A stretch of 64,000 bases of DNA from Macrostomum lignano (lineage: Eukaryota): the NCBI GenBank assembly GCA_002269645.1, contig NIVC01001190.1, positions 186,001 through 250,000 of the forward strand. The letters are read 5' to 3'. The notes under the pieces are model-generated. The model saw nothing but the letters and a program-made list of their open reading frames with translations. It had not been told where the DNA came from and ran no database searches. Below are positions 3,326-62,077 of the stretch, in pieces; positions within the stretch are counted from its first letter, which is position 1, and each line of letters opens with the position of its first letter. The position numbers were made by a program, and so were the translations under genes.

Positions 3326-3334
3326 TGCATTTTT

Positions 3335-4123
3335 GTGCAAAAGAGTCTGGGGTGTGAAGAACCGCCCAGTCACGAGTGTACATTGTCTTGGGGAAGAGAG
3401 GCTGAGGTGTGAACAACCAGTTAGTCACGAGTGTACATTGTCTTGGGGAAGAGAGTCTGGGGTGCGAACAGCCAGTTAGTCACTAGTGTACATTGTGTTG
3501 GGGAAGAGAGGCTGGGTGTGAAGAACCGCCCAGTCACGAGTGTACGTTGTTTTTGTGGAAAAGAGTCTGGGGTGTGAGGAACCGCCCAGTCACGAGTGTA
3601 CATCGTCTTGGGGAAGAGAGGCTGGGTGTGAAGAACCGCCCAGTCACGAGTGTACGTTGTTTTTGTGGAAAAGAGTCTGGGGTGTGAAGAACCGCCCAGT
3701 CACGAGTGTACATTGTCTTGGGGAAGAGAGTCTAGCGTGTGAGGAACCGCCCAGTCACGAGTGTACATTGTCTTGGGGAAGAGAGGCTGGGTGTGAAGAA
3801 CCGCCCAGTCACGAGTGTACGTTGTTTTTGTGCAAAAGAGTCTGGGGTGTGAAAAACCGCCCAGTCACGAGTGTACATCGTCTTGGGGAAGAGAGGCTGG
3901 GTGTGAAGAACCGCCCAGTCACGAGTGTACGTTGTTTTTGTGCAAAAGAGTCTGGGGTGTGAAAAACCGCCCAGTCACGAGTGTACAATGTCTTGGGGAA
4001 GAGAGGCTGGGTGTGAAGAACCACCCAGTCACGAGTGTACATTGTCTTGGGGAAGAGAGGCTGGGGTGTGAAGAATCGCCCATTCACGGGTGTACATTGT
4101 GTTGGGGAAGAGAGGCTGGGTGT
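3335..4123. repeat. 54-55-bp satellite (GGGTGTGAAGAACCGCCCAGTCACGAGTGTAC...), interrupted by the LTR element and resuming at 8752-8790
   Basis: About 14 tandem units of two alternating variants; the unit continues in register after the 8564-8751 LTR. Confidence 0.9.
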
Positions 4124-40392: not shown

Positions 40393-43300
40393 TCACAGCG
40401 CCAACTGGCTGATCGCGTCATTCCGTCGTTTGATAAGGAAGTTGCGCAGATCCTCGTTCGACCGACTGCTGCCAGGGGAGTCGCCGCCGCTGCCGCCGAT
40501 GCCAGCGGCAACTCCGCCAGTCGGCGACGAAACTACCGAGGCGGAGCCTTCGCGCTGGTGCCGACGCTTCCGGTGCCGATGCTTGTGCCGCTTCTGCTTG
40601 GAATGCTGGCGGCGCTGCTTCTTGGCTTTGCGCTCAGACGAAGACGTCGGTTGCTGAGCCGTCGCAGCAGCAGCTGTCGATGCCGCGGCTGCCGCAGTCC
40701 GCTTGCCGGCCGTCACCACCGACACCATTGAGGTCGGCGCCAATTTACTGCGTCGCTGCTGCTGCTGCGGCGAAGACGACGAAGCGACCGACGACGAGGC
40801 AGAATTTGCCGAGTCGGCCGACACGGCGCGACGATGTCGAGACCGACCGGAGCGACCGCGACTGCGGCTCCGGCTGCGCCGATGCTCGCGCGGCTGCCGT
40901 CGGCGCTTCTTCTTGCGCCGGTCGGCTGCAGAGATCGAAGCCGACGAGCTCGAGCTCGAGCGGGAACGCGACCTTCGGGGCGGCTCGCCCACGGAGCTGC
41001 CTGCCGCCGCCGCCGCTGGAGCAGCAGCCGGAACCGAAGCCGCCGAAGACACGGCAACAGCAGCAACAGCAGCAGAAGCGGAGGAAGACGGCGCCGTTGA
41101 AGCTGACGACAACTGCAACGGCAAAGACATCGGCGGCAGTGGCGGCTGCTGCTGCTGAGGATGCTGAGGAAGATGATGATGATAGCTCTGCAGCTGCTGG
41201 TGCGGCATCATCAAAGCGGCAGCCGGATTCGGGAAACCGGCACCAGCCCCGACCGGAACAGGAGCGAATGACGGATGCGGAGGCTGATACAGTTGAGGAT
41301 GCTGCTGAGGATGATGAAGCTGAGCATGCTGCTGCGGGGCCATCTGCTGCATATGATAGCCAGCCTGGTTGATAAACACAGGCGGCCGAAACGACTGATT
41401 GATCTGCATCGCCTGCGGCGGCATAGAACGAGGCTGATGAGGCTGCATTGGCGGATGCTGAGGCGGATGCAATACTTGATGATGCTGCTGGTGCTGAGGT
41501 TGTTGCTGCTGTTTCTGTTGCTGCTTCCGCTGGTGCGGCGGGCTTCTTCTAGCAGACGAATTCCGACGATCTGAAGTCGATGAAGATTGCGACACTGTCC
41601 TGGCCAGCTGCCGCTTGACTCCTGTCGATGAGGCGGACGATGCAGCAGCAGCGTCATCGGGTGCAGCGTCAACTGGCGGCTCGTCAAACAGCAGGTCGGT
41701 GCAATCGTCCAGCACGAGCTCGTCCACTGAGTTGAAGATTTCTACTGAGGACTCTCCCTCATCGTCCTCCTTCACAGCATCCGAGTTTGCTTCAGCCTCA
41801 TCATCCTGGGCTTCTTCTTGAACCGGCTGCTCCTCTTTCTCGTCGGCAACCGACGCAGCGGCTGAGGAGGCCGCCGAAGGCGACGACGATCTGAGCAGCG
41901 ACTCCTCCTCGTCCGTGTCCAGCGTGCACGGCGCCGATTCCACTGGCGGTGCCGTAGCGCCAGATCTTTGCTGCGACGGGTTCGCCTCCTCGAATCCGTT
42001 GCCTAGCAACAGCGACGCCGAGGCTTGGGCGACGATTTTACTATCGGCTTTGCTCTTTTGAGCTTCGCTATCAGCATCCTTAGCATCCTCATCATCTTCA
42101 TCATCGTCCTCTTCGACATCGTCTCGAATTCGATCAAATTTCCCGTGTCCTGTGAGTCGCTGCTGACTCGCAGTTGCTAAGGGCTGCTGCGGCTGTTGTT
42201 GTTGCTGCTGTCTCTGCGCCTGCTGGGTGACTGGAGCTCTACTGGCCGTGCCGGGAGCTGGCGGAACCGCCGAAGCCGCTGCAGGTTTGGCATCCCCCGG
42301 CCTGTGCTGTCGCCGAGTCAACACCAACAGGTTGGCCCGACGGTTGTGCTGGGGATAAATGAATAAGAAAGTTTGTTAGCTGGTGCTGTGACGTGAGGCC
42401 ACTGACAGAAGGTCCTGTCCCATATTAAAATTGTTATTGCTTTCGACAGGAAGCAGATCCACTTTTCTGATATGTTTTGCCATTTTAAAATTAGGATTTT
42501 ATGTTGTGATCGGTTTTATGAATCTATTTGTTCATTCTTAGCTGAATCTGTAACAGTAACAGTATAATTCAACAAAGGTGATAAAATGGATTCATAAAAC
42601 CAATCAGTCGAGCTTTGCCATTTTTATAAGAAACAGGGGGGTTGTGTGCACCCTAGCGCACTTTAAGCGACATAGGCACACAACCGGCGAGAGGCATTAC
42701 TGCCCATTCCGCCGACTCCCCTGAGCAGGCATACAAGCGCGCGGATACGTACGCAGGCACACACTCACACAGGAGTGTACAGCGGCCCTAACTTTATATT
42801 ATCGTTAGGCATGTACACTTCACTGCGCCTTGGGGGGGGGGGTTGGCTCTCAAGCCGTTAATTGCATGAGCAGAGCCAAGCCGAGATTCCAATTCAGCCC
42901 CAAATTAATGTGACTGCACTTGGAATCGAGCCTGGGTCGCTGGCACACCAGAGCAGCTGCGCTACCGCTGGGCTACGGCCCCCCTCGAGCTTTACCATGC
43001 ATTTTTATAATATTTAGGTACACGAACTGTACATAGACCAATAATATTTATTCTACGTAGAATAGCAATAACAATTTTTGTGCTGAAAAAAGTTGATATC
43101 TCGTGACATCTTGTCGTTTAGAAACACTTCTTTCCTATTTGACCTGTGTGATCTGCAACGCGTCTGAAACAACTTTGGGGCGACACAAGTGACTGCGGGA
43201 CGCTTCTTAGCCTTGGCCAACCATCCTTTCTTTTGTCCTAAGGGTAGTAGTAGTAGGGCAGAATTGAGCGTTAGAATTATACACGGGACAGTATGCTTTT

Positions 43301-44252: not shown

Positions 44253-45099
44253 CTGTGAGTTCAGAGTTGAGCATTGTGGTGTAATGAAGATTTGGTTCAT
44301 TTTTTGAATACCACTACATCTCCATCTAGGTATAAATTTAAATAAGAATATACGATTCTGATACATCACGAATGACATTGTATCAGATTTGTATTAATTA
44401 CCAGAATTACAATCCATATTACATAAATTTCTCTGTAATTATTGCAATCAGGATTTGCATTTTAAAATGCAACAAAGTCTAAACTTTGTTGACTTGTTTT
44501 AACTAGTGAAAAACTTATAGAAGTCCCTGTTTTCACATTGTTATTGTTGTGAAAACTTGTAAAAACTGATAAATTGACATTGTATTTGGCTGCAAGTTAG
44601 TTGCTAGTATTAGTTGCATCAAAATATTTTTACTTGTATTTAGACATGGTTCCACAACTCACTATAGACTCCAGGCAGTGACCCTATGTCTAACTACAAG
44701 TTGAATTTTTTACATTTTATTTTATAGCAAATGGATTTAGAAATTTTTCACAACAAACCAGTTACCAGATTTTCACACTAAGCCATTGTGCAATGACTTC
44801 TTTCTATTATGGTGTTTTGAAACTGTGCTCAACTCTTGAGTATTCTCTTACAATGCTGCTGCACTGCAATCTATTCTAACAAAGGGCAAAAGGTGAAAAT
44901 AGAGAAGAAACAAAAGAGAAAAGGCCATCTTTAGCCTAAGGTTTTATGGTCAAGCTTGTAGGTGCATCAAAACTACTTGATATTGCACTAGAAGACTTAG
45001 AAATTCTAGATACTGACACTGTTATATGAATTAACCTTGATAGCATAAAGATTCTATCTAAATAGATAACTCAGATAAAAGCTCAGATGCTAATACTAG

Positions 45100-48000
45100 T
45101 AGAGGTCGGACGAGCAAAAATTTTTGGGTCGGGCGTGAGTAGTCGTGAATAATTTCAGCTTTGCCGTGATCGTGATCGTGATCGTGATTGGTTCGTGAAA
45201 AATTAAAAGTAAAAAATTTCCGTTCAAATTTTGTTTTTTTTTCTTCAAATTTGAATTTTTCTATCAGTTAATGTGTTTGATTCTATTTTTAAGTGCTTCT
45301 ATACCATCAGCTTATACCATCTGCATCTGCCCATCTGGCTTTCTTCTCTGGTTGAGAAGGAACTCAGAGTCTGGCTGAGAAGTAAGAAGTTCTTACTTCT
45401 TAGACATTTGTGTTGCTTTTTGGCTTTCTCAAAGCTCAAACTAAGCTGAAAGCTGTAACTATTTAGTATTTTTATTTTTAAATTTTTAATTTAAAAGTAG
45501 TATTTGCTACTATTACTATTTTAGAATTTAGTATTAAATAAATAGTTAAAAAAAAATTTCATTTCATTTTGATCATGAATTTGCATATTTGAGTTTTTCT
45601 TTCTTCTTATTATTTTTATGCTATAATAATGTATAAATAGATTAGATACTATACAGATAGATAGTAGATACTAGAGCATAATTTTATAATCTGATTGTCT
45701 AATAGTTATTTAGTAATTATAATTTATAACTAATAATTTTTAATATATAAGCATAGTATTTTTTTACTAAAATAAATTGCTGTAAATTAAAAATTAAGGT
45801 TGACTAAGTCTAAGTACTAAGTAGCAAATATACTTGATGGATATGCTAAATTAAATTGTTATTTGCTATTGTTATTGTCATTTGTTAATAGTAATAATAA
45901 TAGTCAAACACAAATATTAAATACTTTTTCTTCTTGAATTGAATTGAATAATGAATAATATTCAATATTCAATATAGTATTAACTATTATGTACTAGTAC
46001 TATCATGTGGTACACTGGTATATTGAATATGTATGCCTGATTGCCTGATGCATAGTAGTATATTTCTAATCTATATGGTTAGTCTAAAAATATTTTTTTC
46101 TAGCCTATTTGACTTTAAAGTCTGTAGTGACTTTACATTTACACTATACTGCTATACTATGCAATATTTTATTTAAAATATAAATAAATATTTTAATTTA
46201 AAATAATATAATACTTGTTTTTTCTTTGCTTTTCTACCTAGCAAATTAAAATAGGCAATTACACAATATTACATTACAATTTACAATTTACAAATCAAAC
46301 AATTTCAGCCATTCATTTGCAATGGCCTCTGTTGATAAGCCAACCCAGCAACCTCGAGGAAGAGGCAGTGCTGTGTGGTTGTACTTTAAAGACGTTGAAG
46401 GAAAAGAGAATTCTGCTGCTTGCCTAGCTTGTAAGAAGGAGGTTCTACGAAACACAGGATCAACAGGCAGCATGCGAAGACACATAGAATCCTGCCATCC
46501 AATTCAATTCAAAGAGCTCCTAAACACTGAGGCAGATCGTGCAAAGCCAAAATGTAAAGATGGACCACAACCATTGAAGCAGCAGAAGTTGAGCACAATG
46601 TTTGCTCAAGCAAATGCTCAAGAATGGTCGGATTCGCACCCTCGTTCGGTTGCAATTGATCGAAAAATTCTCCGCTTTATTGTGTTGGATTCACAGCCAT
46701 TCTCTGTGGTAGAAGGTGAAGGCTTTCGCGATCTGTTGAAAGAAGCATGTCCGCAATATCGATTGAAGAGCACTCGATTTTATCATGACAAGCTAGAGAC
46801 TCTCTATGAAGAAATTAAATTGCAGGTCCAGGACGAAATAGACAGACTGCGAGATTTCGGTTTCACGTGTGACTTGTGGAGTGACGGCCAGTTGGCACTC
46901 ATGTCCTTCACAATCCATTCTATCACGCCAGATTTTGAGCGTAAGCAGCTTTTACTGTGCGTAAAGCCATTCACTGATGCCCATACTGGGCTTAACATCT
47001 CGGCCGTTTTTTCGACAACCCTTGGTGAGTGGGGCATTGGCTTAGAGCAAGTCAGCCTCCTCCTGCGTGATGGGGCCAGCAACATGAAGCTTGCAGGAGA
47101 ACTTCTGAAAGTACCATCTGCCCATTGTGCTGCCCACAAGCTGAACCTTGTTGTTAAGGATTCCATCTCCGGTCATCGAGGACTGAAGACAATACTTGAC
47201 AAAGCACGGAGCATTGTTGGCCACTTCCACCACTCTGTAACCGCTCAAGCAAACCTCAAAACACTGCAGCTCCAGCTGAAGCTACCAACACACAGCCTCG
47301 TGCAAGATGTAGACACACGCTGGAATTCAACACTAGCCATGTTACGCCGAATCAACGAGCAAGAGGAAGCGTTTAGTGTCTATCGCACCAGACACCGACC
47401 AATTGAAATCCTGACGGACAATGAGTCAGATGTTTCAAAGAAAGCTGTCAAACTTCTTGAGATTTTTGAGGTTTTTACGCTAGAAGTCAGCAGGGAAACT
47501 GCCAGCATCTCGTGTATCTTGCCGATGGTGAAAGTGTCGCTGGAGCATCTGCAGCAGGTAGACTGCTTTGGCATCACGTACCTTCGAGACGACCTGGTGA
47601 AAGGGTTGACTCAACGCTTCTCTGACGAAAAAAAGAGTCACCACCACATTGTTGCTACGATGTTAGACCCACGCTTCCGGCTAGATTTTTTCGATGAAGA
47701 GCAGCGCAACTTTGCTAAGGCTGAGCTCGTAAAAGCAATGAATGAAATTTTGCGTGAAACTTCTCTTCCTACTGTTGATGGCGATACAGCCATAGACGAG
47801 GACCTCTCCGATGTATCTATCGAAACTGAGCCGTGAGTATTTCCTCTATTTCATAATTCAATGTACATGTACATGTAACAAAAAAATTAAATTATAAATT
47901 ACATTTGCTACATCTGTAAGTTATAAATTTTATAACTAATATATCAAAGTTCTCTTTGTTTTAACTTTTAACTTTTAATTTCACCTTTTTAGACAAACTG

Positions 48001-49312
48001 AGTCTCAGCCTCAGCAGCTATCTATGTCAGCCCTGTTCGAGAAGTCTTCTACTTCTAGTGCTGCAGCTGCAACTCTGCGTGACCTGTCTAGGGCCGGAAC
48101 GCTACTGCCAGTTTCAAACAGAGGCAATGCTATGGACAAGTTGGCTCGTGAAATGGCAGCCTACCTATCAGAGCCTCGACTTCCATTTGAGGAAGACCCA
48201 ATGAAGTTCTGGAGAGACAAGACTCCATCAACTGCAATGTCAGCACTTGTTCGGAAATTTCTGGGACCACCACCTACCAGTGTTCCAAGTGAGCGTATCT
48301 TCAGCAACGTTGGAAACATCTACGAGCCGAAACGACGTCGCCTGCTTGGCGAAACCGTTGAAAAGCTTGTTTTTATTAACTATAATGTTCGGAAGTTTGA
48401 CCCATAGAGAAATGAGCAGGGTCCATTCAATTCATTGCTGTTATTGCTGATTAGTGATTAGTTTTACTTTTTTGAAGATTGAGATCAGAGAGACAAGATA
48501 ATGATAGAGAAAATAAATAATCAAAGACTATAGAACAAGTAGAGTTGGAGCTACAAGAAAAAGTTTATCGATAAGGAATAGATAACTGTTGCTATAGTGT
48601 GTAGCTGTGTACTCTGTAGTCTGTAGACTCTGTAGTATGATTTTTTGCATGTAGCTAGTATAGTATAGATTAGACTTAAATTAGTCATTGTAATAACACT
48701 ATATGTGTAGAACATAAAAGTAAAGTAGTAAACCTACATGTACTCTTTTATACTTCATATTCATACACTGATAAGCTTTTCTGTTTTTCACTTTTCACTG
48801 TTTTCAGTTCTGTAGGCAGCTAAGCAAGTTAACAAACACTTGTCTGTACATGTCATGTACTATCATGTAGTGAAATTTATATACAGTCATACATATATAC
48901 AATTTATATTTTCATTCAGTGCTTTTCAGTTTTAATTTTACATTTTACAAAATAAACAAAAGATTGAAAAGAATAAGGCAGTAAGCTTTGAACTTCGAAA
49001 ATCCACTTTAACTTCGAACTTTCTGAACTAAGTAAAGTAAACTGAAAACTCTATTCTGTAAGTTTTGTGTTAAAACACATTCGTTGTATTTGAAAAGAAA
49101 AACAAAAACCAAGTAAGTCTACATTTAGGACTGTACACGATTGTGGTTTGGGGAACTGAAAAGTATAAACATAGTAACATCTGAAGCTGAAAGAAACCCA
49201 CAATCACGATCACGCACGTGAAAAATGTTTCACGACTCGTGAATTCACGACACTGAAAAAGGTCGTGAATTCACGATATCGTGATCACGATCGTGATCAC
49301 GTCCTACCCCTA
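45100..49312 (+). mobile_element. Autonomous-looking hAT DNA transposon, 4213 bp
   Basis: TIRs TAGAGGTCGGACG / CGTCCTACCCCTA (two mismatches); perfect 8-bp TSD AATACTAG (45092-45099, 49313-49320); subterminal CGTGAT/ATCACG repeats at both ends. Confidence 0.95.
46322..48407 (+). CDS. hAT transposase (BED finger, DDE, C-terminal dimerisation domain), 641 aa; exons 46322-47832, 47993-48407
   Basis: BED zinc finger (WLYF..CLAC..MRRHIESCH), TCDLWS, RDGASNM, CAAH, TRWNST, SERIFS. The GT-AG intron joins the ORFs in frame (1926 nt in total). Confidence 0.93.
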
Positions 49313-51235
49313 AATACTAGTTCTAACATTGGTCCACTATTCACTAAAAGACATGGTCCAAAATTTCATCATCTAGTGCCATTGCTTAAGGCTGCCAAGC
49401 TAAATGCTCTTTGAGATAGTCAACCAAATAAGACTTAAACTCACATAGCATTGCAGAAAATACCTAACAGGTCTACAATATTCAGTCAGCTGACTTCAAT
49501 ACAAGCATGCCTGATGTCATGAAGCAATTGCTTAGAGAACAAAAGCAAACAAATTGGCTACTAGTAGCAGCTTTTGAAAAAAACAAGAAGTGACAAACTC
49601 GATTCAAATTGAGAATATAGCTGAGTTTACCTACCACATTGGACAAATAGTTGACTTCAAATCAATTAATTATAGTGATCCCAACAACTGACATTCGCTC
49701 TAACATTTGTCACCATTGTTTATGGTAAACAAGCCCTCAAGGGTTGCTTGCTATCAAGCATAGGAATAACCAAGCAAAAGTTGTTTTCACTAGTTGAGTA
49801 CAAAGATATATTGGAAGTAATAAAATGCTTTCTAAAATGCTTTTGGTATACAGTAGAATATCATGAGAATTAGGAACTTATACATGCAAACTTTTACAAC
49901 TTAACTAGTCTATATATACTTTTTAAACTTTTTAAATAATGTTAGCAGTCTAATTTTTATTGTTTCTTGTAGACTTAACTTGCTCACAAAGAATGTCATT
50001 ACATCTCTTTGACATTTGCTTGCTTTATCTTGTTTATTTAAATTAAAGTGTATTTTTACAATTGTATATGTTAATATTTTCTTACTGACCTTTACTTGCA
50101 GATATGACCTGCTTTCAAAGTATCTCTTTGACCTCTTTTTGCAAAATGCAAACTACTCTTAGAGTAGACAAAATTGTTATTTTTCTCTGACTATTTTCTT
50201 TTTTTTAACTATTTGCCAAGTATTATATGATCCTGTACTTTGTCTTTGTTGCTATTTTATACTTTTTATTATTGCTTTGTATGTGTGTAAATTGTTATTC
50301 CATATTTATGTTCAGATATATAATAATAAAAAAATCAGGTTATTTTGAACTGATAATGGTATTTGATAGCAATCCAACTTATCAAGTTAATAAGAAGTTT
50401 AACTATATTGATTTTTTATCTAGTGAGATTTATGTTGAATCTATTAGAATTTACAGTTTTTAAAAAGAAAACTTTAACTACACTTTGGAATTGGACTTTA
50501 GCTAGTGAAATTGAATTAGAAAAATTATGTTTATTACAATTGGAAGTACTAAAAAAGAATAACATTTGGAATTTTTTAATTGCCAAAATTACAATTTTAA
50601 TCAAATATTTTTAATTTATGCTATATTTTTTGTCCCATAGAAAGAGAAGAAAGAGATAAGAGAAAAAAATTATATAGATAAGTGAGCTAAAAGAAGACAT
50701 TAACTTTTAGTATGCTGAATTACTATTATAATGTTTAAAAGGATCTGAGAAACAGATTTTTGAGTTTTTAGCTCTTTAGGCTACATTTGGCCTGCAAGCT
50801 AGATTTTGCCAATCCTTAGTTTGCTTTACCATTAAAAGATGAAAATTATTAGCAAAAAGTACATAACTCACTCAATGCTAATGTGGTAGCTAATAAGGTT
50901 AAATGTTTGAGATATAGTTTATGGGCAAAAGTTGACAGAGACAAAGTAGTATAGTTTGTAGCTAAGGCTATTAATAGAGGGGCCATGGTTACCTAAATAC
51001 TGAAACTAAGTTAAACTTGTTTGACAATTATTTGTAATATATATTCATGTGCTCTGTGCTCCATTTTGAGGCCTTGGACAATGGGCTCAGAGGCCAGAGT
51101 GAAGCTGTTTCAGGCAGATTGTCTTTCTATATAACACTGAGACCTAGACTAGACTTCTGCCCATGACATGCCCTTTGGACTGTACAGTTAACATTTGTTC
51201 ACTTATATAAAGTTGTTGTGAGTGTTAAAAATACA

Positions 51236-51280
51236 CTAGACCCTGAAGATGGCCATTGTTGGTCCGAAACGCGTCGGTAG
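51236..51280 (+). ncRNA. Minimal type-I hammerhead ribozyme motif (Penelope-like element tail)
   Basis: ACC-CTGAAGA-T-GGCCA(TTGT)TGGTC-C-GAAA-CGCGT-C-GGT: core CUGAnGA and GAAA, palindromic stem III ACGCGT, GUC cleavage triplet, 3-bp stem I ACC/GGT. Confidence 0.65.
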
Positions 51281-51380
51281 AAAGAATTAATTGTAATCTA
51301 TATTGATTTTAACTTTTGTATTCCTACTATTTACTTAGTTATATATGCATATAAAGTAATTTTACTCTTTACTTTTTTAA

Positions 51381-53115
51381 GGGAGGCCATAGCCCAGCGA
51401 TCTAGCATAGGCTCTAGTGTGCCAGTGACCTAGGCTCAATTCCAAGTGCAATCATAAATTTGGGGCTAAATTAGAATCTCGGCTTGGCTCTGCTTGTGCA
51501 ATTAACAGCCTTGAGAGCCAACCCCCCCCATGTGCAGTGAAATGTACATGCCTAATTATAAAATAAAGGGTCACTAATCACTTTGGCGACAGGTCACTTT
51601 GGCGACAGTCACTTCAGCAACACATTTGGCTTACTTTGGTGATAGACATATATTGCATAAGCAGTAACCCTGGTAGTGCCTAAAATAAAAAAGAAAGCAG
51701 TTAAAAACAAATGCAAGAATAACAAATTTATAGCACCAAGTTTTTTACGCATTGTAATAGAAAGCATTGCAATTATTTTGTTCTAAAAAAATACTGGTAT
51801 ACTGAATACATTACACACTTATACATATACAGTGTTTAGATGTTCTTGTTCAAACAAAATCGTCTTTCATTTCTCCATCTCTCTTCTCTCTTAATCTCTA
51901 CCTGTTCCCCTTCTCTCTCTCTCTTTTTCTTTCTCTCCAATGCATTAGTTGTACAGGTTAACTCGCATAGCTGGGTATTAGTAGAATGGGAAAAGGCTGT
52001 CCTTCTCTGAATACATTAAATACATGTATGAGCTGCCTACATGTACATATAACTTTAATTGCGCTGCAGGAAACATTTTCTAATTTTTTTTCAGAGCACG
52101 TGGATACAGAGCACGATGTATTTGCCACGAGAGATCAGTCTACAAAAAAGCCACTCGAACTAACAATGACATTGAGAGCTTTCACAACCGTTTGAACAGT
52201 TGGGCTCAATGCAGTCAGCTCCAGTTCTACCTCCTGGTCAAGCTGCTACACAACGAGGGCCGCATGGTCTCTATTGACTCGCGGTTGGTGTCACAAGGTG
52301 CTCTGAGGCGGTTGCAGCGAAAGAAGTACCGCCAGCGACAGTCCAAATACTTCAAACTTTGGTTGGAATATCAAAGTTGGAGACCAATCGATTCAGTCAC
52401 TTTTGGAGGCTTGCAGCAAGCTGAATAGACTGTAAGCTGTCTAAGGTGCATCTGCATATGCTTAACTTCTGTAATACTAAGACTTCTTTGTGTGCTACAT
52501 GTAACATCTTTGCTTTTAATGCATGTTTATTATTCTCTTTCTTTTTTTTATTTCTGCAACAGAGTGACAAAGTGTATGTGCTTGTACATATACTTGTGTA
52601 TGTCAAATAGATTTATCACAATACTTATATTACTATATAATGCAAATCAATTCATTTTGTACTTTATTGTAATGGGCAAATATCAATCAAGGAAAACGTG
52701 ATATCAATCTGTTAATTTAATTATTGTTCATAACAAAATACTAAAAATTTGCATTGCTTTTTTAATAAATCTAGATAAATCATACTTTTTAATCGTCAAG
52801 TTTCATTGGCAAAAAATACGTGTTATTATAAATGTGCTCTAAACAAAGAACATATAGTATTTAGCTAATTGTCGCTGAAGTGATCCAAATATGTCGCCGA
52901 AGTGACTGTTACCGAAGTGACTTGTTGCCGAAGTGATTGTAATTCAAATAAAGCTGTACACTCCTATGTGAGTGTGGGCCTGTGTATGTATCTGCACACT
53001 TATATGCCTACTCAAGGGAGTCGATGGAATGGGCAGTAATGCATCTCGCCAGTTGTGTGCCTATGTCGCTTAAAGTGCACCAGGGTGCGCACAATCCACT
53101 AGCCTCTAATAATAA
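51381..53115 (+). mobile_element. Diverged tRNA-SINE copy split by a DNA transposon (SINE parts 51381-51568 and 52954-53115)
   Basis: The two parts are colinear with the intact SINE at 42620-42984. Confidence 0.8.
51569..52945 (+). mobile_element. Internally deleted Mutator-like (MULE) element with transposase remnant (about 52095-52428)
   Basis: 8-bp TSD AAATAAAG (51561-51568, 52946-52953); G...C ends; inverted subterminal TCACTTTGGCGACA / TGTCGCCGAAGTGA repeats; peptide RTNNDIESFHNRLN...QLQFYLLVKLLHNE matches the MULE transposase C-terminal motif. Confidence 0.8.
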
Positions 53116-54909
53116 AAATTACTCTTTTAATCTTTTGTATAAAAATCTTTGCATGGCCTTTTGAAGTACCTCTATATAATGTTACTATGTCAGTAGGTTT
53201 TGGTAATTCTATTTCAATAGGATTTTAGAAAAGTACAATAGGCTATGAAATAGTAAGATTGCCATTGGTATTTTGGCATTAAGCCCTATAACGCTATAAT
53301 ATAACATTATTTAAGATCTTTATTAATAAAAATATTAAAAAACATATATAAATATATATTTGTCCATTGTAATTATTATTAGATTACTTACTAGCTCATC
53401 GTCACAATGATTTTGTCCTTGATTGCCTGCATTATTAGATTCCATATCAAGCCCAACCAACTGAAGATTGGCAGGCAGTTTTGGCAGATAGTTTAGCCTA
53501 GTCAATTAGCAGAGATTAAGTGTAAAGCTTTTAATTTTTTTGAATGCATGAAAACTATATAGCCAACCTAAATCTATGATTTCAATGGCTTCCAAATATA
53601 CTGGTACAACTATTTTTATTCAAGCACAAATATATAGCACTTTATAGTAGGCCTGTCAAGTCTATGGCTATAATGGGGCTATTCCTTTCGCATCTATGGT
53701 TTAGTTTATTTAAAGTAATGTAGAGAATTTTAATAAAATACAAAACGTTATTCTTTTTTATAAACTTATGCAGTAAGTGTGAGAATGAACCAGTAAATAC
53801 GATGGATAAGGATAATACTTTAGCAGGCTCTTTAAATTCGTATATTTAGAGATAGGGGCCCGGCGCAAAAATGTATCAAACAATAATATTTGAATTTTGG
53901 TCAAAGTAAAACAAGTACCAGCTAAAACAATAGAAAAAGCAGCATTAGAACAGATGCAGTAAAATTTGGTAAAAAAAGTACTTTTTAAACCAAAAACGGC
54001 AATCAAAAAAAACTATCAAGAACCTAGCACAACGCTATAAACGCTATAAACGCGCGCTATCAAAATGATGCCTAGGTGTTTTTTGAAAGAACCTAAATAG
54101 AACGTCGACAGGACATTTCATAGCCCTTTTGTCAAATAGTCATTGTGTCATTTTGTTCAACGGCAGAAAGTAGATGCGTGCGTGGTGATTTAAAAGTTAA
54201 ACTGGAGTACTCTGCTTTCTACTTGACTTAACATTCTGACTGGAAAACCTCTTGCGGGAAAAGCTCGCGCGGGCAAACAACCTTGGTGGGAAAATTCTTC
54301 CTCAATTCTCAAAACGCACATTTGAGAATAAACGTACAATTTTCAAAACGTACAAAATGTACAATTTTTACGTACATGAATATAGTACAGTTAACTAGTA
54401 CATGTAGGTGTACGTGCACGATAATCTGCGGATTCGTTTTCTCTGTCTGCTGAATTTAAATGTCCTACCTCGTCCATGCACGCTTGTACATATAAAATAT
54501 CATAAACCAGCCGTCCAAAACCGCTGGTTTTGCTATAATTTAAAAATGCCATTAAAGCTGGGTTCGCAGCGCGATCCCGTTATGGAGAGTCCAGCATGAG
54601 GATGCTGGGCGGTCGGGAACTGGGGCCGGAGATGATTTTGGGCCTCGTGGTCCCCGGCAGATCCAGATTTGCATGGGGCAGCCAATTTAAGCCAGGGGTA
54701 ACTGGCGTCAGGCTGCGCCCAATGCAAGGACTGTAACTTATGATAATTAACACATTCCTGCTGCATGCACGCCTACCGGTGTAGACAATCGTGTTGAATC
54801 GACCTTTCGCCGCTATTCACTGGGGGCGCTTTCGGTTGCCTGCTTTATCAGTTTTGGCTCCTGTATCAGATTATGGCTTTCTAAAGGGGATGTCAACTTA
54901 AGCACCAGA

Positions 54910-57710
54910 ATGGAGCCCGAAGTTCAGCTCCGGCCCAAACCGACTGCAATCGATAACTTGTCGGCCCAGACGACTAGAATCGCCGAGACATCCCATCCGG
55001 CTCCCTTCCTTGGGGTCCCAGGGGATAAAGGGGATAAAATGGGGATCTCATGTCAACTTAAGGCTCTGGAATGGAGCCCGAAGTTCAGCTCCGGCCCAAA
55101 CCGACTGCAATCGATAACTTGTCGGCCCAGACGACTAGAATCGCCGAGACATCCCATCCGGCTCCCTTCCTTGGGGTCCCAGGGGATAAAGGGGATAAAA
55201 TGGGGATCTCATGTCAACTTAAGGCTCTGGAATGGAGCCCGAAGTTCAGCTCCGGCCCAAACCGACTGCAATCGATAACTTGTCGGCCCAGACGACTAGA
55301 ATCGCCGAGACATCCCATCCGGCTCCCTTCCTTGGGGTCCCAGGGGATAAAGGGGATAAAATGGGGATCTCATGTCAACTTAAGGCTCTGGAATGGAGCC
55401 CGAAGTTCAGCTCCGGCCCAAACCGACTGCAATCGATAACTTGTCGGCCCAGACGACTAGAATCGCCGAGACATCCCATCCGGCTCCCTTCCTTGGGGTC
55501 CCAGGGGATAAAGGGGATAAAATGGGGATCTCATGTCAACTTAAGGCTCTGGAATGGAGCCCGAAGTTCAGCTCCGGACCAAACCGACTGCAATCGATAA
55601 CTTGTCGGCCCAGACGACTAGAATCGCCGAGACATCCCATCCGGCTCCCTTCCTTGGGGTCCCAGGGGATAAAGGGGATAAAATGGGGATCTCATGTCAA
55701 CTTAAGGCTCTGGAATGGAGCCCGAAGTTCAGCTCCGGCCCAAACCGACTGCAATCGATAACTTGTCGGCCCAGACGACTAGAATCGCCGAGACATCCCA
55801 TCCGGCTCCCTTCCTTGGGGTCCCAGGGGATAAAGGGGATAAAATGGGGATCTCATGTCAACTTAAGGCTCTGGAATGGAGCCCGAAGTTCAGCTCCGGA
55901 CCAAACCGACTGCAATCGATAACTTGTCGGCCCAGACGACTAGAATCGCCGAGACATCCCATCCGGCTCCCTTCCTTGGGGTCCCAGGGGATAAAGGGGA
56001 TAAAATGGGGATCTCATGTCAACTTAAGGCTCTGGAATGGAGCCCGAAGTTCAGCTCCGGACCAAACCGACTGCAATCGATAACTTGTCGGCCCAGACGA
56101 CTAGAATCGCCGAGACATCCCATCCGGCTCCCTTCCTTGGGGTCCCAGGGGATAAAGGGGATAAAATGGGGATCTCATGTCAACTTAAGGCTCTGGAATG
56201 GAGCCCGAAGTTCAGCTCCGGCCCAAACCGACTGCAATCGATAACTTGTCGGCCCAGACGACTAGAATCGCCGAGACATCCCATCCGGCTCCCTTCCTTG
56301 GGGTCCCAGGGGATAAAGGGGATAAAATGGGGATCTCATGTCAACTTAAGGCTCTGGAATGGAGCCCGAAGTTCAGCTCCGGCCCAAACCGACTGCAATC
56401 GATAACTTGTCGGCCCAGACGACTAGAATCGCCGAGACATCCCATCCGGCTCCCTTCCTTGGGGTCCCAGGGGATAAAGGGGATAAAATGGGGATCTCAT
56501 GTCAACTTAAGGCTCTGGAATGGAGCCCGAAGTTCAGCTCCGGACCAAACCGACTGCAATCGATAACTTGTCGGCCCAGACGACTAGAATCGCCGAGACA
56601 TCCCATCCGGCTCCCTTCCTTGGGGTCCCAGGGGATAAAGGGGATAAAATGGGGATCTCATGTCAACTTAAGGCTCTGGAATGGAGCCCGAAGTTCAGCT
56701 CCGGCCCAAACCGACTGCAATCGATAACTTGTCCGCCCAGACGACTAGAATCGCCGAGACATCCCATCCGGCTCCCTTCCTTGGGGTCCCAGGGGATAAA
56801 GGGGATAAAATGGGGATCTCATGTCAACTTAAGGCTCTGGAATGGAGCCCGAAGTTCAGCTCCGGCCCAAACCGACTGCAATCGATAACTTGTCGGCCCA
56901 GACGACTAGAATCGCCGAGACATCCCATCCGGCTCCCTTCCTTGGGGTCCCAGGGGATAAAGGGGATAAAATGGGGATCTCATGTCAACTTAAGGCTCTG
57001 GAATGGAGCCCGAAGTTCAGCTCCGGCCCAAACCGACTGCAATCGATAACTTGTCGGCCCAGACGACTAGAATCGCCGAGACATCCCATCCGGCTCCCTT
57101 CCTTGGGGTCCCAGGGGATAAAGGGGATAAAATGGGGATCTCATGTCAACTTAAGGCTCTGGAATGGAGCCCGAAGTTCAGCTCCGGCCCAAACCGACTG
57201 CAATCGATAACTTGTCGGCCCAGACGACTAGAATCGCCGAGACATCCCATCCGGCTCCCTTCCTTGGGGTCCCAGGGGATAAAGGGGATAAAATGGGGAT
57301 CTCATGTCAACTTAAGGCTCTGGAATGGAGCCCGAAGTTCAGCTCCGGACCAAACCGACTGCAATCGATAACTTGTCGGCCCAGACGACTAGAATCGCCG
57401 AGACATCCCATCCGGCTCCCTTCCTTGGGGTCCCAGGGGATAAAGGGGATAAAATGGGGATCTCATGTCAACTTAAGGCTCTGGAATGGAGCCCGAAGTT
57501 CAGCTCCGGCCCAAACCGACTGCAATCGATAACTTGTCGGCCCAGACGACTAGAATCGCCGAGACATCCCATCCGGCTCCCTTCCTTGGGGTCCCAGGGG
57601 ATAAAGGGGATAAAATGGGGATCTCATGTCAACTTAAGGCTCTGGAATGGAGCCCGAAGTTCAGCTCTGGCCCAAACCGACTGAAATCGATAACTTGTCG
57701 GCCCAGACGA
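54910..57710 (+). repeat. 161-bp tandem array, about 17.4 copies (left arm)
   Basis: Exact 161-bp period; copies nearly identical. Confidence 0.98.
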
Positions 57711-58247
57711 TTATTCCATTCAAAACATCGATAGCTACGAAGGTGACTCCTGGAGAGACTTTGAGTTACACATCCAAGCCGCCGGGAGTGTTGGAAGTTT
57801 CGGCAAGCGACGCCGCTAGAAAACTGGAGCAACCGATTCGGTCGGTGGCATCCGTCTTGATTTTTCTTGATTTGATTCTGCCATAATTCAAAATCCTACC
57901 GCGTGATTCTTAGAGTGTGTGACAGCAGCGGACAATCGCTTTGGTTTTAGAGATCCAGGATTGCAACTTCTTCCTGGCTTCTACTCGTCAGCAAAAGCAG
58001 GAAGTAGGACTGCAGGCTGCGATTGTCATGTACGAGCGTAATGGCATTGCTCAAACTCCTGGGCTGCTACGCTTACCACCAAGATACATATGTAGCTATC
58101 GAAGGTCTGGTGCCGGCCTTCGCTTTGTTGATTTCGCTCTTCCACGCAGCCTTGTTGCCAGACTTTATGCTAGAGAAAACGCTTTACCACAGCAGCGAAA
58201 GCCTACTGAGCAACATTTTAGGGGCCAGCGAGAGGAGTTTCAGTCAG

Positions 58248-60767
58248 CCCAAGGAAGGGAGCCGGATGGGATGTCTCTGCGATTCTAGTCGTCTGGGCCG
58301 ACAAGTTATCGATTGCAGTCGGTTTGGGCCGGAGCTGAACTTCGGGCTCCATTCCAGAGCCTTAAGTTGACATGAGATCCCCATTTTATCCCCTTTATCC
58401 CCTGGGACCCCAAGGAAGGGAGCCGGATGGGATGTCTCTGCGATTCTAGTCGTCTGGGCCGACAAGTTATCGATTGCAGTCGGTTTGGGCCGGAGCTGAA
58501 CTTCGGGCTCCATTCCAGAGCCTTAAGTTGACATGAGATCCCCATTTTATCCCCTTTATCCCCTGGGACCCCAAGGAAGGGAGCCGGATGGGATGTCTCG
58601 GCGATTCTAGTCGTCTGGGCCGACAAGTTATCGATTGCAGTCGGTTTGGGCCGGAGCTGAACTTCGGGCTCCATTCCAGAGCCTTAAGTTGACATGAGAT
58701 CCCCATTTTATCCCCTTTATCCCCTGGGACCCCAAGGAAGGGAGCCGGATGGGATGTCTCGGCGATTCTAGTCGTCTGGGCCGACAAGTTATCGATTGCA
58801 GTCGGTTTGGGCCGGAGCTGAACTTCGGGCTCCATTCCAGAGCCTTAAGTTGACATGAGATCCCCATTTTATCCCCTTTATCCCCTGGGACCCCAAGGAA
58901 GGGAGCCGGATGGGATGTCTCGGCGATTCTAGTCGTCTGGGCCGACAAGTTATCGATTGCAGTCGGTTTGGGCCGGAGCTGAACTTCGGGCTCCATTCCA
59001 GAGCCTTAAGTTGACATGAGATCCCCATTTTATCCCCTTTATCCCCTGGGACCCCAAGGAAGGGAGCCGGATGGGATGTCTCGGCGATTCTAGTCGTCTG
59101 GGCCGACAAGTTATCGATTGCAGTCGGTTTGGTCCGGAGCTGAACTTCGGGCTCCATTCCAGAGCCTTAAGTTGACATGAGATCCCCATTTTATCCCCTT
59201 TATCCCCTGGGACCCCAAGGAAGGGAGCCGGATGGGATGTCTCGGCGATTCTAGTCGTCTGGGCCGACAAGTTATCGATTGCAGTCGGTTTGGTCCGGAG
59301 CTGAACTTCGGGCTCCATTCCAGAGCCTTAAGTTGACATGAGATCCCCATTTTATCCCCTTTATCCCCTGGGACCCCAAGGAAGGGAGCCGGATGGGATG
59401 TCTCGGCGATTCTAGTCGTCTGGGCCGACAAGTTATCGATTGCAGTCGGTTTGGGCCGGAGCTGAACTTCGGGCTCCATTCCAGAGCCTTAAGTTGACAT
59501 GAGATCCCCATTTTATCCCCTTTATCCCCTGGGACCCCAAGGAAGGGAGCCGGATGGGATGTCTCGGCGATTCTAGTCGTCTGGGCCGACAAGTTATCGA
59601 TTGCAGTCGGTTTGGTCCGGAGCTGAACTTCGGGCTCCATTCCAGAGCCTTAAGTTGACATGAGATCCCCATTTTATCCCCTTTATCCCCTGGGACCCCA
59701 AGGAAGGGAGCCGGATGGGATGTCTCGGCGATTCTAGTCGTCTGGGCCGACAAGTTATCGATTGCAGTCGGTTTGGGCCGGAGCTGAACTTCGGGCTCCA
59801 TTCCAGAGCCTTAAGTTGACATGAGATCCCCATTTTATCCCCTTTATCCCCTGGGACCCCAAGGAAGGGAGCCGGATGGGATGTCTCGGCGATTCTAGTC
59901 GTCTGGGCCGACAAGTTATCGATTGCAGTCGGTTTGGTCCGGAGCTGAACTTCGGGCTCCATTCCAGAGCCTTAAGTTGACATGAGATCCCCATTTTATC
60001 CCCTTTATCCCCTGGGACCCCAAGGAAGGGAGCCGGATGGGATGTCTCGGCGATTCTAGTCGTCTGGGCCGACAAGTTATCGATTGCAGTCGGTTTGGGC
60101 CGGAGCTGAACTTCGGGCTCCATTCCAGAGCCTTAAGTTGACATGAGATCCCCATTTTATCCCCTTTATCCCCTGGGACCCCAAGGAAGGGAGCCGGATG
60201 GGATGTCTCGGCGATTCTAGTCGTCTGGGCCGACAAGTTATCGATTGCAGTCGGTTTGGTCCGGAGCTGAACTTCGGGCTCCATTCCAGAGCCTTAAGTT
60301 GACATGAGATCCCCATTTTATCCCCTTTATCCCCTGGGACCCCAAGGAAGGGAGCCGGATGGGATGTCTCGGCGATTCTAGTCGTCTGGGCCGACAAGTT
60401 ATCGATTGCAGTCGGTTTGGTCCGGAGCTGAACTTCGGGCTCCATTCCAGAGCCTTAAGTTGACATGAGATCCCCATTTTATCCCCTTTATCCCCTGGGA
60501 CCCCAAGGAAGGGAGCCGGATGGGATGTCTCGGCGATTCTAGTCGTCTGGGCCGACAAGTTATCGATTGCAGTCGGTTTGGTCCGGAGCTGAACTTCGGG
60601 CTCCATTCCAGAGCCTTAAGTTGACATGAGATCCCCATTTTATCCCCTTTATCCCCTGGGACCCCAAGGAAGGGAGCCGGATGGGATGTCTCGGCGATTC
60701 TAGTCGTCTGGGCCGACAAGTTATCGATTGCAGTCGGTTTGGTCCGGAGCTGAACTTCGGGCTCCAT
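58248..60767 (-). repeat. 161-bp tandem array in inverted orientation, about 15.7 copies (right arm)
   Basis: Reverse complement of the left-arm unit. Confidence 0.98.
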
Positions 60768-62077
60768 TCTGGTGCTTAAGTTGACATCCCCTTTGCAATT
60801 TCCACTACGTTCTGATTCTCACCCCCCCCCCCTAGCAAACGATGACGAGCCGTACTACTGGGTGATTACCACTACCCTAGATGACATTCTGTTTCTCAAA
60901 CTTAGCAGATCTTGTGCCATTCTTAGCAGATCTTCTCAATCTGCTCGGTTCTTGCATTGCAGTATCTTCTAAGAAGGGACGTACATTTGTTTTGTCATTC
61001 ATTGGCTAAAGTGTTCTAGCTGAACTCTAATTTGTTTCATGACAAAAATGGGACAACATATTTAAGAAGTATGCGATTTGAAGCTATAAATAAAAAAATA
61101 TAAAAGTTAAGATCTTGTACGATGTAGCAAGTCGCTCAGATCTTGTAAGTTTACCTAAGTATCATAGCGAAGATCTTGCACGCTCTTGCAAGTACTTGCG
61201 CAGCAACCCAAGAAGATCAGAAGCTCCTCTGACCGCGAATCAGTCCGTTTACAGTGATTTTTTTTATTTTACGAGGTAGACGAGATTTCATTGGATTATT
61301 GCCCATACTTGCCGTAACCTCAGCACCTGGCGGGGCTCGGAGAGGTTAGATAGACAGGACTCGTTGGTCAAGCGTGGAGCAAATCAAAGAAGAGAAGAGT
61401 GCTCAAAACGAGATTAGGACATTTTAGAAGATGGAGTTCACCCTTTCCAAGTTGCAACGCCAATTTATCGTACTTATACATGTAACATCAACCTACTACG
61501 TGTATCTCTAGGTAAGATAATACATTAATACCCCATGAATATATTTGCATACAAGCTTTAAAAGGCTCTAAGCTACGGTTAGCTAAAGTCTTGGTGATGT
61601 ATATTGATCTAAAAACTGCAAATACAGAAGCAGCTTAAAGGCGCAAGTGAGAAATTTGATGTTTGCTGTTGCTGAGAATCAGGGGTCTGAATTGTTTGGC
61701 TTTCATTGTTTCAACTTCCGGTGTGAAGCCTCGCTTTACCCAGCACAGCGAGGTGCCTGACTTACTCAGGCTGAAGTCACCCGATCTGCTTCCTTTGCTC
61801 CTGCTTTCTACTTGTAGAAGTTTTACAGGAAACTGGGGAAGTCAGAAAACGGATTTTTCGGTAGTAACATGCGTGTTAGGAAGACTTCCTGGTCGTTAGC
61901 TAGGAAGTAGAAAAATTTCGTAAGATTTTGGTCGAAGTAAAAAAAGTTTTTCTTCTCATAAACTTGTCAAACTTTATTTATAGATTCTGTATTCGAGGTT
62001 TCATTTGACAAAAGACAGGAGATCGAAAGCAAAAACAAACAATTCTTTAATAATATCAAATTGCAATTTTATTCATC

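What the first reader, a model, noticed from the sequence alone, without database searches (positions are those of the whole stretch)
54883..60794. 5.9-kb foldback element with AAA|...|TTT junctions: candidate Spy-type transposon whose TIRs became satellite arrays
Seen: both ends carry the same unique terminal variant (GGGGATGTCAACTTAAGCACCAGAATGG) of the 161-bp unit, followed inward by about 17 and 16 tandem copies in opposite orientation around a 537-bp spacer. The flanks are AAA on the left and TTT on the right with no TSD. Known: Spy transposons (PIF/Harbinger-related PHIS group) insert between AAA and TTT without a TSD. Inference: a non-autonomous Spy-like element whose end sequence was tandemly amplified into 2.5-2.8 kb arms. 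It could act as a mobile satellite seeder and a potential giant hairpin or dsRNA source.
Basis: partly seen in the sequence, partly recalled or inferred. Interest (0 to 1): 0.8.

Follow-up and report, generated by a model that had tools for sequence, protein, structure and literature searches.

The report
Foldback satellite repeat in a flatworm
A 5.9-kb stretch of the flatworm Macrostomum lignano genome consists of two mirror-image arrays of a 161-bp satellite with identical sharp ends, a known kind of "foldback" repeat, and its proposed link to the rare Spy transposons rests on three bases that belong to the repeat itself.

Summary
Window 54883-60794 (NIVC01001190.1:240883-246794, M. lignano assembly Mlig_3_7) holds two inverted arrays of a 161-bp monomer, 17.5 and 15.8 copies. 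They flank a 537-bp non-coding spacer and form a 2,547-nt inverted repeat that is 99.5% matched. Both outer ends carry the same 28-nt terminal variant, found nowhere else in the DNA examined. No target-site duplication exists at any plausible boundary.

The Spy reading is not demonstrated. The "AAA|TTT flanks" are complementary to each other, so they are simply the last 3 bp of the maximal inverted repeat. AAAGGGGAT, the terminal 9-mer that includes the AAA, occurs once in every monomer (34 copies) and nowhere else in the window. The Spy terminal motif GGANNNNG is not met. No transposase lies in the element or its flanks. Published surveys report no Spy in flatworms. No second copy or empty site was found in about 265 kb of other M. 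lignano DNA, and the whole genome could not be searched.

Best reading: a non-coding foldback-type element, structurally like Drosophila FB, Tetris or Galileo, of unassigned superfamily. A local inverted duplication of a satellite array is the main rival. Interest is modest.

The parts
54883..54885 (+). AAA: the outermost 3 bp of the maximal inverted repeat. It is either element sequence or the left half of an AAA|TTT target.
   Evidence: Complementary to TTT at 60792-60794. Included in arm I1. Part of the 9-mer AAAGGGGAT that recurs in every monomer.
54886..54913 (+). Left terminal variant GGGGATGTCAACTTAAGCACCAGAATGG.
   Evidence: Exactly 2 matches in the window, 0 expected. Differs from the internal unit junction by a 5- or 16-bp deletion plus a substitution cluster.
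54883..57713 (+). Left arm: 18 head-to-tail 161-bp monomers (1 terminal variant, 16 full, 1 inner partial of about 83 bp).
   Evidence: TRF 54890-57710, 17.5 copies, 99% matches. Unit-by-unit dissection.
57714..58247 (.). Middle domain (spacer), about 537 bp, unique and non-coding.
   Evidence: No self-match elsewhere in the window or in 14 loci. Its ORFs have no Pfam hit.
58248..60794 (-). Right arm: 16 monomers in inverted orientation (1 terminal variant, 14 full, 1 inner partial of about 124 bp).
   Evidence: TRF 58248-60787, 15.8 copies, 99% matches. Dissection. Pairs in register with 54883-57429.
60764..60791 (-). Right terminal variant, identical to the left one.
60792..60794 (+). TTT: the complement of the left AAA and the outermost bases of the inverted repeat.

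Best explanation
This is a non-coding foldback repeat in the Macrostomum lignano genome. Two inverted arrays of one 161-bp satellite monomer (2.83 kb and 2.55 kb) end outward in the same sharply defined terminal variant and flank a 537-bp unique middle domain.

Most likely it is, or descends from, a non-autonomous foldback-type DNA element of the structural class of Drosophila FB, Tetris and Galileo. Its superfamily is unassigned.

Proposed history (inferred):
1. An ancestral element had inverted ends beginning (AAA)GGGGATGTCAACTTAAG.
2. A subterminal 161-bp segment carrying a slightly different copy of that end motif, plus three GGGGAT decamers, was tandemly amplified once.
3. The array reached the other arm by recombination or gene conversion between the inverted arms.
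4. Unequal exchange within each arm has since kept the monomers nearly identical and reshuffled their order. The outermost and innermost units, which cannot take part in exchange, stayed divergent.

Shown: the architecture, the identical termini, the homogeneity, the lack of a TSD and the lack of coding capacity.
Inferred: mobility, the order of events, and any role of the repeated end motif as multiplied transposase-binding sites.

The AAA/TTT are best read as the last bases of the inverted repeat, so Spy-type integration is one possible superfamily assignment rather than the finding.
For: Architecture: arrays, spacer and a 2,547-nt inverted repeat at 99.5% identity.

Sharp ends: the inverted repeat stops within one base on both sides at a terminal variant that is identical on both ends and unique in 64 kb plus about 265 kb of M. 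lignano DNA. The flanks are unrelated to each other.

End motif in every unit: each monomer contains a near-copy of the terminus, GGGGATCTCATGTCAAC, 17 + 15 times. Tetris is similar: its TIR-220 repeats share a 37-bp stretch with the terminal domain, and Galileo's tandem repeats carry secondary transposase-binding sites.

Edge units are diverged while the interior is homogenised: the only polymorphism is position 44 C/A, plus three arm-specific variants. Both C and A types occur in both arms but in different order (7 of 16 in register; shared-run p = 0.37). This means a common origin or exchange between arms, followed by independent reshuffling.

The middle domain and the arms have no protein homologues or Pfam domains, and Rfam finds nothing.

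The inner ends fall at different unit phases (about 83 and 124), and the flanks do not join the inverted repeat. Both argue against a missed-adapter palindrome artefact.
Against: No TSD, whereas FB, Tetris and Galileo make 7-10 bp TSDs.

Only one copy was seen, and mobility is not demonstrated. A bona fide nested insertion 2 kb away shows a clean 8-bp TSD and paralogous empty sites, so the absence of a TSD here is not a property of the assembly.

The unique terminal domain is only about 28 nt, much shorter than in described foldback elements.

No candidate autonomous partner was identified.
Confidence: 0.5

Rival explanations
1. Spy-type (PHIS superfamily) non-autonomous transposon. The element proper is GGGG...CCCC (54886-60791), inserted without duplication between host AAA and TTT, with TIRs expanded into satellite arrays.
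For: AAA and TTT directly abut the GGGG/CCCC ends. No TSD at any boundary. The TIR starts with GG, as is usual in PHIS. Spy TIR length is known to vary from 9 to 1,474 bp. By composition alone, AAA as the last 3 bp of an inverted repeat has a chance of about 2%.
Against: AAA/TTT are complementary, so they simply extend the inverted repeat. AAAGGGGAT is a motif of every monomer, 34 copies inside the element and 0 outside, which removes most of the surprise. GGANNNNG is matched at 2 of 4 positions at this boundary, and at 3 of 4 only if the end is moved 2 bp inward, where the flank is no longer AAA. Han et al. found no subrepeat structure in long Spy TIRs and needed empty sites to assign AAA/TTT to the host. 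Spy has not been reported in Platyhelminthes in the 2014, 2015 or 2024 surveys. No DDE transposase is in the window. No other copy or empty site was found.
Confidence: 0.17
2. Not a mobile element. An ordinary 161-bp satellite array in a satellite-rich region underwent a local inverted duplication, by fold-back or template-switch repair or by inversion within the array. The arms were then kept similar by recombination.
For: No TSD is needed. Only a single copy is seen. The 64-kb window carries about a dozen unrelated arrays, which suggests a rearrangement-prone, gene-poor region. Both position-44 variants are present in both arms, as expected if a polymorphic array was duplicated. The inner ends sit at arbitrary unit phases.
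Against: The duplication end-point would have to coincide to the base with the outer edge of the array, so that no flanking DNA joined the inverted repeat and the diverged edge unit was copied entire. That is a chance of a few positions in thousands. The unit order is not mirrored between arms.
Confidence: 0.25
3. Two independent, head-to-head copies of an asymmetric element or array that has one defined end (...GTTGACATCCCCTTT) and a variably truncated other end. The 537-bp 'spacer' is then host DNA. This covers a Helitron/Helentron-like carrier of tandem repeats.
For: The inner ends are at different unit phases (83 and 124) and the copy numbers differ. Helitron-family elements insert without a TSD and often carry arrays in either orientation.
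Against: The ends are not 5'-TC / CTRR-3'. Two copies of an element otherwise unseen in about 330 kb would have to lie 537 bp apart in opposite orientation. The arms are 99.5% identical in register.
Confidence: 0.05
4. Assembly artefact: a palindromic or chimeric long read, or a mis-join within the satellite.
For: The locus comes from a single long-read assembly (Mlig_3_7). L002 is the same contig, not an independent one. Satellites are hard to assemble.
Against: Missed-adapter palindromes are symmetric about their centre and extend into the flanks. Here there is a 537-bp unique centre, the arms differ by 1.8 units and in variant order, and unique flanks lie inside a 340-kb contig. At 5.9 kb the whole structure is within the length of a single read.
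Confidence: 0.03

Closest known systems
Tetris foldback transposon of Drosophila virilis (Dias et al. 2014, PMC4079207)
   Same: A non-coding foldback element. Its long TIRs contain tandem repeats of satellite size (220 bp there, 161 bp here) that share sequence with the terminal domain. It has a non-coding middle domain, copy number differs between arms, and the repeats behave as satellite DNA.
   Different: Tetris has a unique terminal flanking domain of up to 866 bp, only a few repeats per arm inside intact elements, 8-10 bp TSDs, and many genomic copies. Here the array runs to within about 28 nt of the end with 16-18 units per arm, there is no TSD, and a single copy is known.
Drosophila FB and Galileo (P superfamily) foldback elements
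   Same: TIRs built of tandem subrepeats. The repeats are thought to multiply transposase-binding sites. Arms are of unequal length (the rest from my general knowledge of FB and Galileo).
   Different: FB subrepeats are 10-31 bp and it makes 9-bp TSDs. Galileo makes 7-bp TSDs and has known autonomous copies. None of these features was found here.
Spy transposons (PHIS superfamily; Han et al. 2014, PMC4122938)
   Same: No TSD, AAA...TTT next to a GG-initial inverted end, and highly variable TIR length.
   Different: The terminal GGANNNNG motif is not met. Long Spy TIRs lack subrepeats. Spy is not known from flatworms. AAA is part of a unit-internal 9-mer here. There is no transposase and no empty site.
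MITE- or Helitron-borne satellite arrays (Xenopus miDNA4/Xstir, oyster Cg170; review PMC12628747)
   Same: A satellite-like array bounded by conserved element ends, with the TE as seed or carrier of satellite DNA.
   Different: In those cases one central array in one orientation lies between short ends. Here two inverted arrays are themselves the arms.

Membership tests
Spy (PHIS superfamily) | Insertion exactly between host AAA and TTT, shown by an uninterrupted AAATTT at empty sites | tested here: inconclusive
   AAA/TTT abut the ends, but they extend the inverted repeat and lie within the unit motif AAAGGGGAT. No empty site was found in the window or in 14 loci. The whole genome was not searchable.
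Spy (PHIS superfamily) | No target-site duplication | tested here: met
   The boundary scan shows nothing above background.
Spy (PHIS superfamily) | Conserved terminal 5'-GGANNNNG | tested here: not met
   GGGGATGT matches 2 of 4 specified positions at the AAA-flanked boundary. The best match is 3 of 4, two bases inward.
Spy (PHIS superfamily) | Autonomous partner encoding a Spy-clade DDE transposase in the same genome | not testable with these tools
   None is in the window. Published surveys list no flatworm.
Spy (PHIS superfamily) | Multiple copies sharing termini and target | tested here: inconclusive
   Zero further copies in 64 kb plus about 265 kb. That is under 0.05% of the assembly.
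Foldback (FB-like) elements: FB, Tetris, Galileo structural class | Long inverted arms forming most of the element around a short non-coding middle domain | tested here: met
   Arms of 2.83 and 2.55 kb out of 5.91 kb, with a 537-bp spacer lacking any domain.
Foldback (FB-like) elements: FB, Tetris, Galileo structural class | Tandem subrepeats within the arms that are related to the terminus | tested here: met
   18 and 16 monomers, each with GGGGATCTCATGTCAAC against the terminal GGGGATGTCAAC.
Foldback (FB-like) elements: FB, Tetris, Galileo structural class | TSD of 7-10 bp | tested here: not met
Foldback (FB-like) elements: FB, Tetris, Galileo structural class | Dispersed copies or evidence of transposition | tested here: inconclusive
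   None in the DNA available.
PIF/Harbinger and ISL2EU | TWA (3-bp) or AT (2-bp) TSD | tested here: not met
   No boundary gives matching TWA or AT direct repeats.
Helitron/Helentron | 5'-TC...CTRR-3' ends, no TIRs, A|T or T|T insertion | tested here: not met
   The ends are (AAA)GGGG.../...CCCC(TTT), with a 2.5-kb inverted repeat.
Satellite DNA | Head-to-tail homogenised monomers with diverged edge units | tested here: met
   99% matches, one polymorphic site, and diverged outer and inner edge units.

The most novel reading that the evidence does not exclude
The element is a genuine Spy-type (TSD-less, AAA|TTT-targeting PHIS) non-autonomous transposon. It would be the first in Platyhelminthes and the first Spy whose TIRs have turned into kilobase satellite arrays, making it a mobile seeder of satellite DNA and of long hairpin-forming loci.
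Probability: 0.15. Interest if true: 0.6.

Novelty: new member of a known kind. Interest (0 to 1): 0.3.

Why it matters
Foldback elements whose arms are tandem repeats are a recognised route from transposon to satellite DNA, and a source of inversions and long hairpins. This would be an undescribed example in a regeneration-model flatworm whose repeat content is poorly catalogued: I found no satellitome or foldback description for Macrostomum. It is also an extreme example, with arrays reaching almost to the termini. If whole-genome analysis showed many copies flanked by AAA|TTT, it would extend the Spy group to a new phylum and give it a new architecture. Without that, it is a tidy but unsurprising repeat annotation.

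Tried and rejected
(1) Satellite ORF as protein bait. The 122-aa ORF is not on record and has no homologue among 5.8 billion proteins.

(2) Flank ORFs as bait for an annotated neighbouring gene or a haplotig. Only a MULE-like remnant hit two UniRef-only M. lignano proteins, which have no contigs on record.

(3) The neighbouring hAT copy as a handle. It retrieved 14 loci, about 300 kb. One of them (L002) is the window's own contig, and none of the others is a paralogous or allelic copy of this locus.

(4) Exact-match scans of the JGI metagenome, GTDB genome and IMG/VR collections with the unit core and the terminus: 0 hits.

(5) Self-comparison of the flanks and spacer within the window: no paralogues.

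(6) Rfam on the whole window: nothing. The monomer's own fold is not significant, z = -1.1.

(7) Test for mirrored unit order between arms, which a recent whole-arm copy would produce: not significant.

(8) The Spy paper's supplements, for TIR sequences: not held.

(9) Rejected: PIF/Harbinger, ISL2EU, Tc1/mariner, piggyBac and Helitron assignments (no matching TSD or ends), and a missed-adapter palindrome artefact (unique asymmetric centre, unique flanks).
Full report
SOURCE. The window's hAT transposase ORF (46322-47836) is 99% identical to Macrostomum lignano proteins. Locus L002, NIVC01001190.1:222310-244407 of assembly GCA_002269645.1 (Mlig_3_7), matches window 49313-54885 and the element at 100%. 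The window is therefore NIVC01001190.1:186001-250000 and the feature is 240883-246794 of that 340-kb contig. The neighbourhood is repeat-dominated. It holds a Gypsy-type pol, a 4.2-kb hAT element, about a dozen unrelated tandem arrays, and no annotated host gene within 10 kb.

OBSERVATION.
- Period-161 arrays lie at 54890-57710 (17.5 copies, 99% matches) and 58248-60787 (15.8 copies, 99%) in opposite orientation, around a 537-bp gap.
- The 28-mer GGGGATGTCAACTTAAGCACCAGAATGG occurs only at 54886-54913 (+) and 60764-60791 (-), with none expected by chance.
- The maximal inverted repeat is 54883-57429 against 58248-60794, 2,547 nt, with 12 ungapped mismatches, that is 99.5% identity.
- Split at the GTCAACTTAAG anchor, the left arm has 18 units: the terminal variant, 16 full units and an inner partial of about 83 bp. 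The right arm has 16: the terminal variant, 14 full units and an inner partial of about 124 bp.
- Interior monomers are identical except for one polymorphic site, position 44 C/A. A few arm-specific changes exist (L12 position 73; R15 and R16 position 94; two changes in the innermost left unit).

WHERE THE REPEAT ENDS, AND THE AAA/TTT QUESTION. These triplets are complementary, so they are by construction the last three base pairs of the inverted repeat. Beyond them the flanks are unrelated. The terminal 9-mer AAAGGGGAT, which contains the AAA, is also an internal motif of every monomer: 18 + 16 occurrences in the element and none elsewhere in the window. The unit ends in three GGGGAT decamers (GGGGATAAA GGGGATAAAAT GGGGATCTCAT) before GTCAAC. 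The terminus AAAGGGGAT|GTCAAC aligns to that junction with a single 16-bp deletion (left-end alignment), or to the last decamer with a 5-bp gap (right-end alignment). The prior surprise of "AAA at the end" is about 2% by base composition, and this largely removes it. Han et al. 2014 faced the same ambiguity and resolved it only with paralogous and orthologous empty sites. I could find no empty site.

NO TSD. Scanning 15 x 15 boundary combinations for direct repeats of 2-12 bp (one mismatch allowed above 3 bp) gave 36 trivial matches against a null mean of 40, and a longest match of 6 bp, which is typical of the null. As an internal control, a nested 1.38-kb TIR element at 51569-52952 shows a clean 8-bp TSD (AAATAAAG) and three paralogous empty sites. 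Insertion signatures are therefore readable in this assembly when they exist.

SPY MEMBERSHIP. The defining features, are an AAA|TTT target proven by empty sites, no TSD, a terminal 5'-GGANNNNG, and a single DDE transposase. Spy TIRs range from 9 to 1,474 bp, and the long ones are "without apparent subrepeat structure". The results here:
- No TSD: met.
- AAA|TTT target: ambiguous.
- GGANNNNG: not met, with 2 of 4 specified positions at the AAA-flanked boundary and 3 of 4 only two bases inward.
- Transposase: none in the spacer, flanks or window.
- Subrepeats: present, unlike described Spy TIRs.

Surveys of 836 genomes (2015) and of 108 Spy-bearing species (2024) list arthropods, molluscs and cnidarians, plus rotifers in 2014, but no flatworm. 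A GG start is usual across PHIS and is weak support. I put Spy at about 0.15-0.2.

SEARCH FOR OTHER COPIES. No tool here searches eukaryotic genomes by DNA, so I used indirect routes.
- The satellite's 122-aa ORF is not on record and has no homologue.
- A concatenate of flank ORFs hit only a MULE-like TE remnant, and those proteins have no contigs on record.
- Members of the hAT protein cluster gave 14 loci, about 300 kb, of Mlig_3_7.
- Excluding the window's own locus, none contains the unit, the terminus, the spacer, the immediate flanks or an empty-site-like sequence.
- Exact scans of the metagenome, prokaryote-genome and viral collections were negative.

This samples under 0.05% of the assembly, so it says only that the family is not extremely abundant.

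WHAT IT MOST LIKELY IS. The anatomy is that of a foldback element: long inverted arms made of tandem repeats, a short non-coding middle domain, and sharp identical ends. The closest described case is Tetris of Drosophila virilis. Its TIRs contain about 220-bp tandem repeats that share a 37-bp stretch with the terminal domain, vary in number between arms and alleles, and seeded a satellite. Galileo's TIR repeats carry extra transposase-binding sites. The general TE-to-satellite routes are reviewed in PMC12628747.

Here each monomer also carries a near-copy of the end (GGGGATCTCATGTCAACTTAAGG against GGGGATGTCAACTTAAGC). The two arms share the same period, the same register from the ends and both position-44 variants, so the array arose once and was shared between arms. 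The unit order is not mirrored (7 of 16 in register; shared-run p = 0.37) and the copy numbers and inner phases differ. Each arm has therefore since been reshuffled on its own by unequal exchange. The edge units, which cannot take part in exchange, stayed divergent.

There are three differences from the known foldback families: no TSD, a unique terminal domain of only about 28 nt, and a single known copy.

RIVALS.
- A purely local inverted duplication of a satellite array explains the missing TSD and the single copy. It needs the duplication end-point to coincide to the base with the array's outer edge (about 0.25).
- Two head-to-head asymmetric arrays, or a Helitron-like carrier, are unlikely because the ends are wrong and the proximity would be a coincidence (about 0.05).
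- An assembly palindrome artefact is unlikely. The centre is a unique 537 bp, the arms are unequal, and the flanks are unique inside a 340-kb contig (about 0.03). Only raw reads can close this.

FUNCTIONAL CLAIMS. The giant hairpin follows trivially from the 2.5-kb complementarity. Roles as a source of dsRNA or small RNA, and as a "mobile satellite seeder", are untested inference. The monomer has no significant fold of its own (z = -1.1), and Rfam finds nothing.

VERDICT. The Spy assignment is neither demonstrated nor excluded, and the key argument for it (the AAA|TTT flanks) is undermined by the unit-internal AAAGGGGAT motif. This is a new member of a known kind, of modest interest.

Noticed in passing
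window 45097-49312: A 4.2-kb hAT transposon (BED zinc finger, hAT dimerisation domain). It is 99.9% identical to copies on at least 13 other Mlig_3_7 contigs, which looks like a very young, possibly active family.
   Followed up: partly
window 51569-52952: A nested 1.38-kb TIR element with an 8-bp TSD (AAATAAAG). Its TIRs carry 16-bp subterminal tandem repeats (GTCACTTTGGCGACAG), and it holds a MULE-like transposase remnant (52084-52425, motif TNNDIESFHNRL). It is inserted in a ~340-bp dispersed repeat that has empty copies at window 42637-42982, L014 5231-5540, L009 1660-1974 and L007.
   Followed up: yes
window 4334-8676 (-): Gypsy-type LTR retrotransposon coding region: zinc knuckle, protease, RT, integrase. 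A 55/110-bp tandem array lies just downstream at 3330-4123.
   Followed up: partly
window 12989-36118: An unusually dense run of unrelated arrays: (CTGT)n-like 12-mer, 2.6 kb; 12-mer TGTATCAGTGCC, 0.8 kb at 99%; 23-bp unit, 10.5 kb; and 21-, 33- and 31-bp units of 1-1.4 kb each. All are in one orientation with strong strand skews. None is related to the 161-bp unit.
   Followed up: no
window 40393-42327 (-): A 644-aa ORF rich in Q, S, A and R in a 60% GC island. It has no Pfam domain and is not annotated as a gene in Mlig_3_7. It could be a low-complexity host gene or a TE ORF.
   Followed up: partly
window 30452-30937 (+): A 162-aa ORF with transmembrane-like hydrophobic segments, possibly an exon of a transporter-type host gene. 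No Pfam hit.
   Followed up: partly
window 54910-60767, both arms: Because 161 is not a multiple of 3, the satellite carries a reiterated 122-aa ATG-initiated ORF that starts immediately after each copy of the end motif. It has no homologue in 5.8 billion proteins and is almost certainly non-coding.
   Followed up: yes
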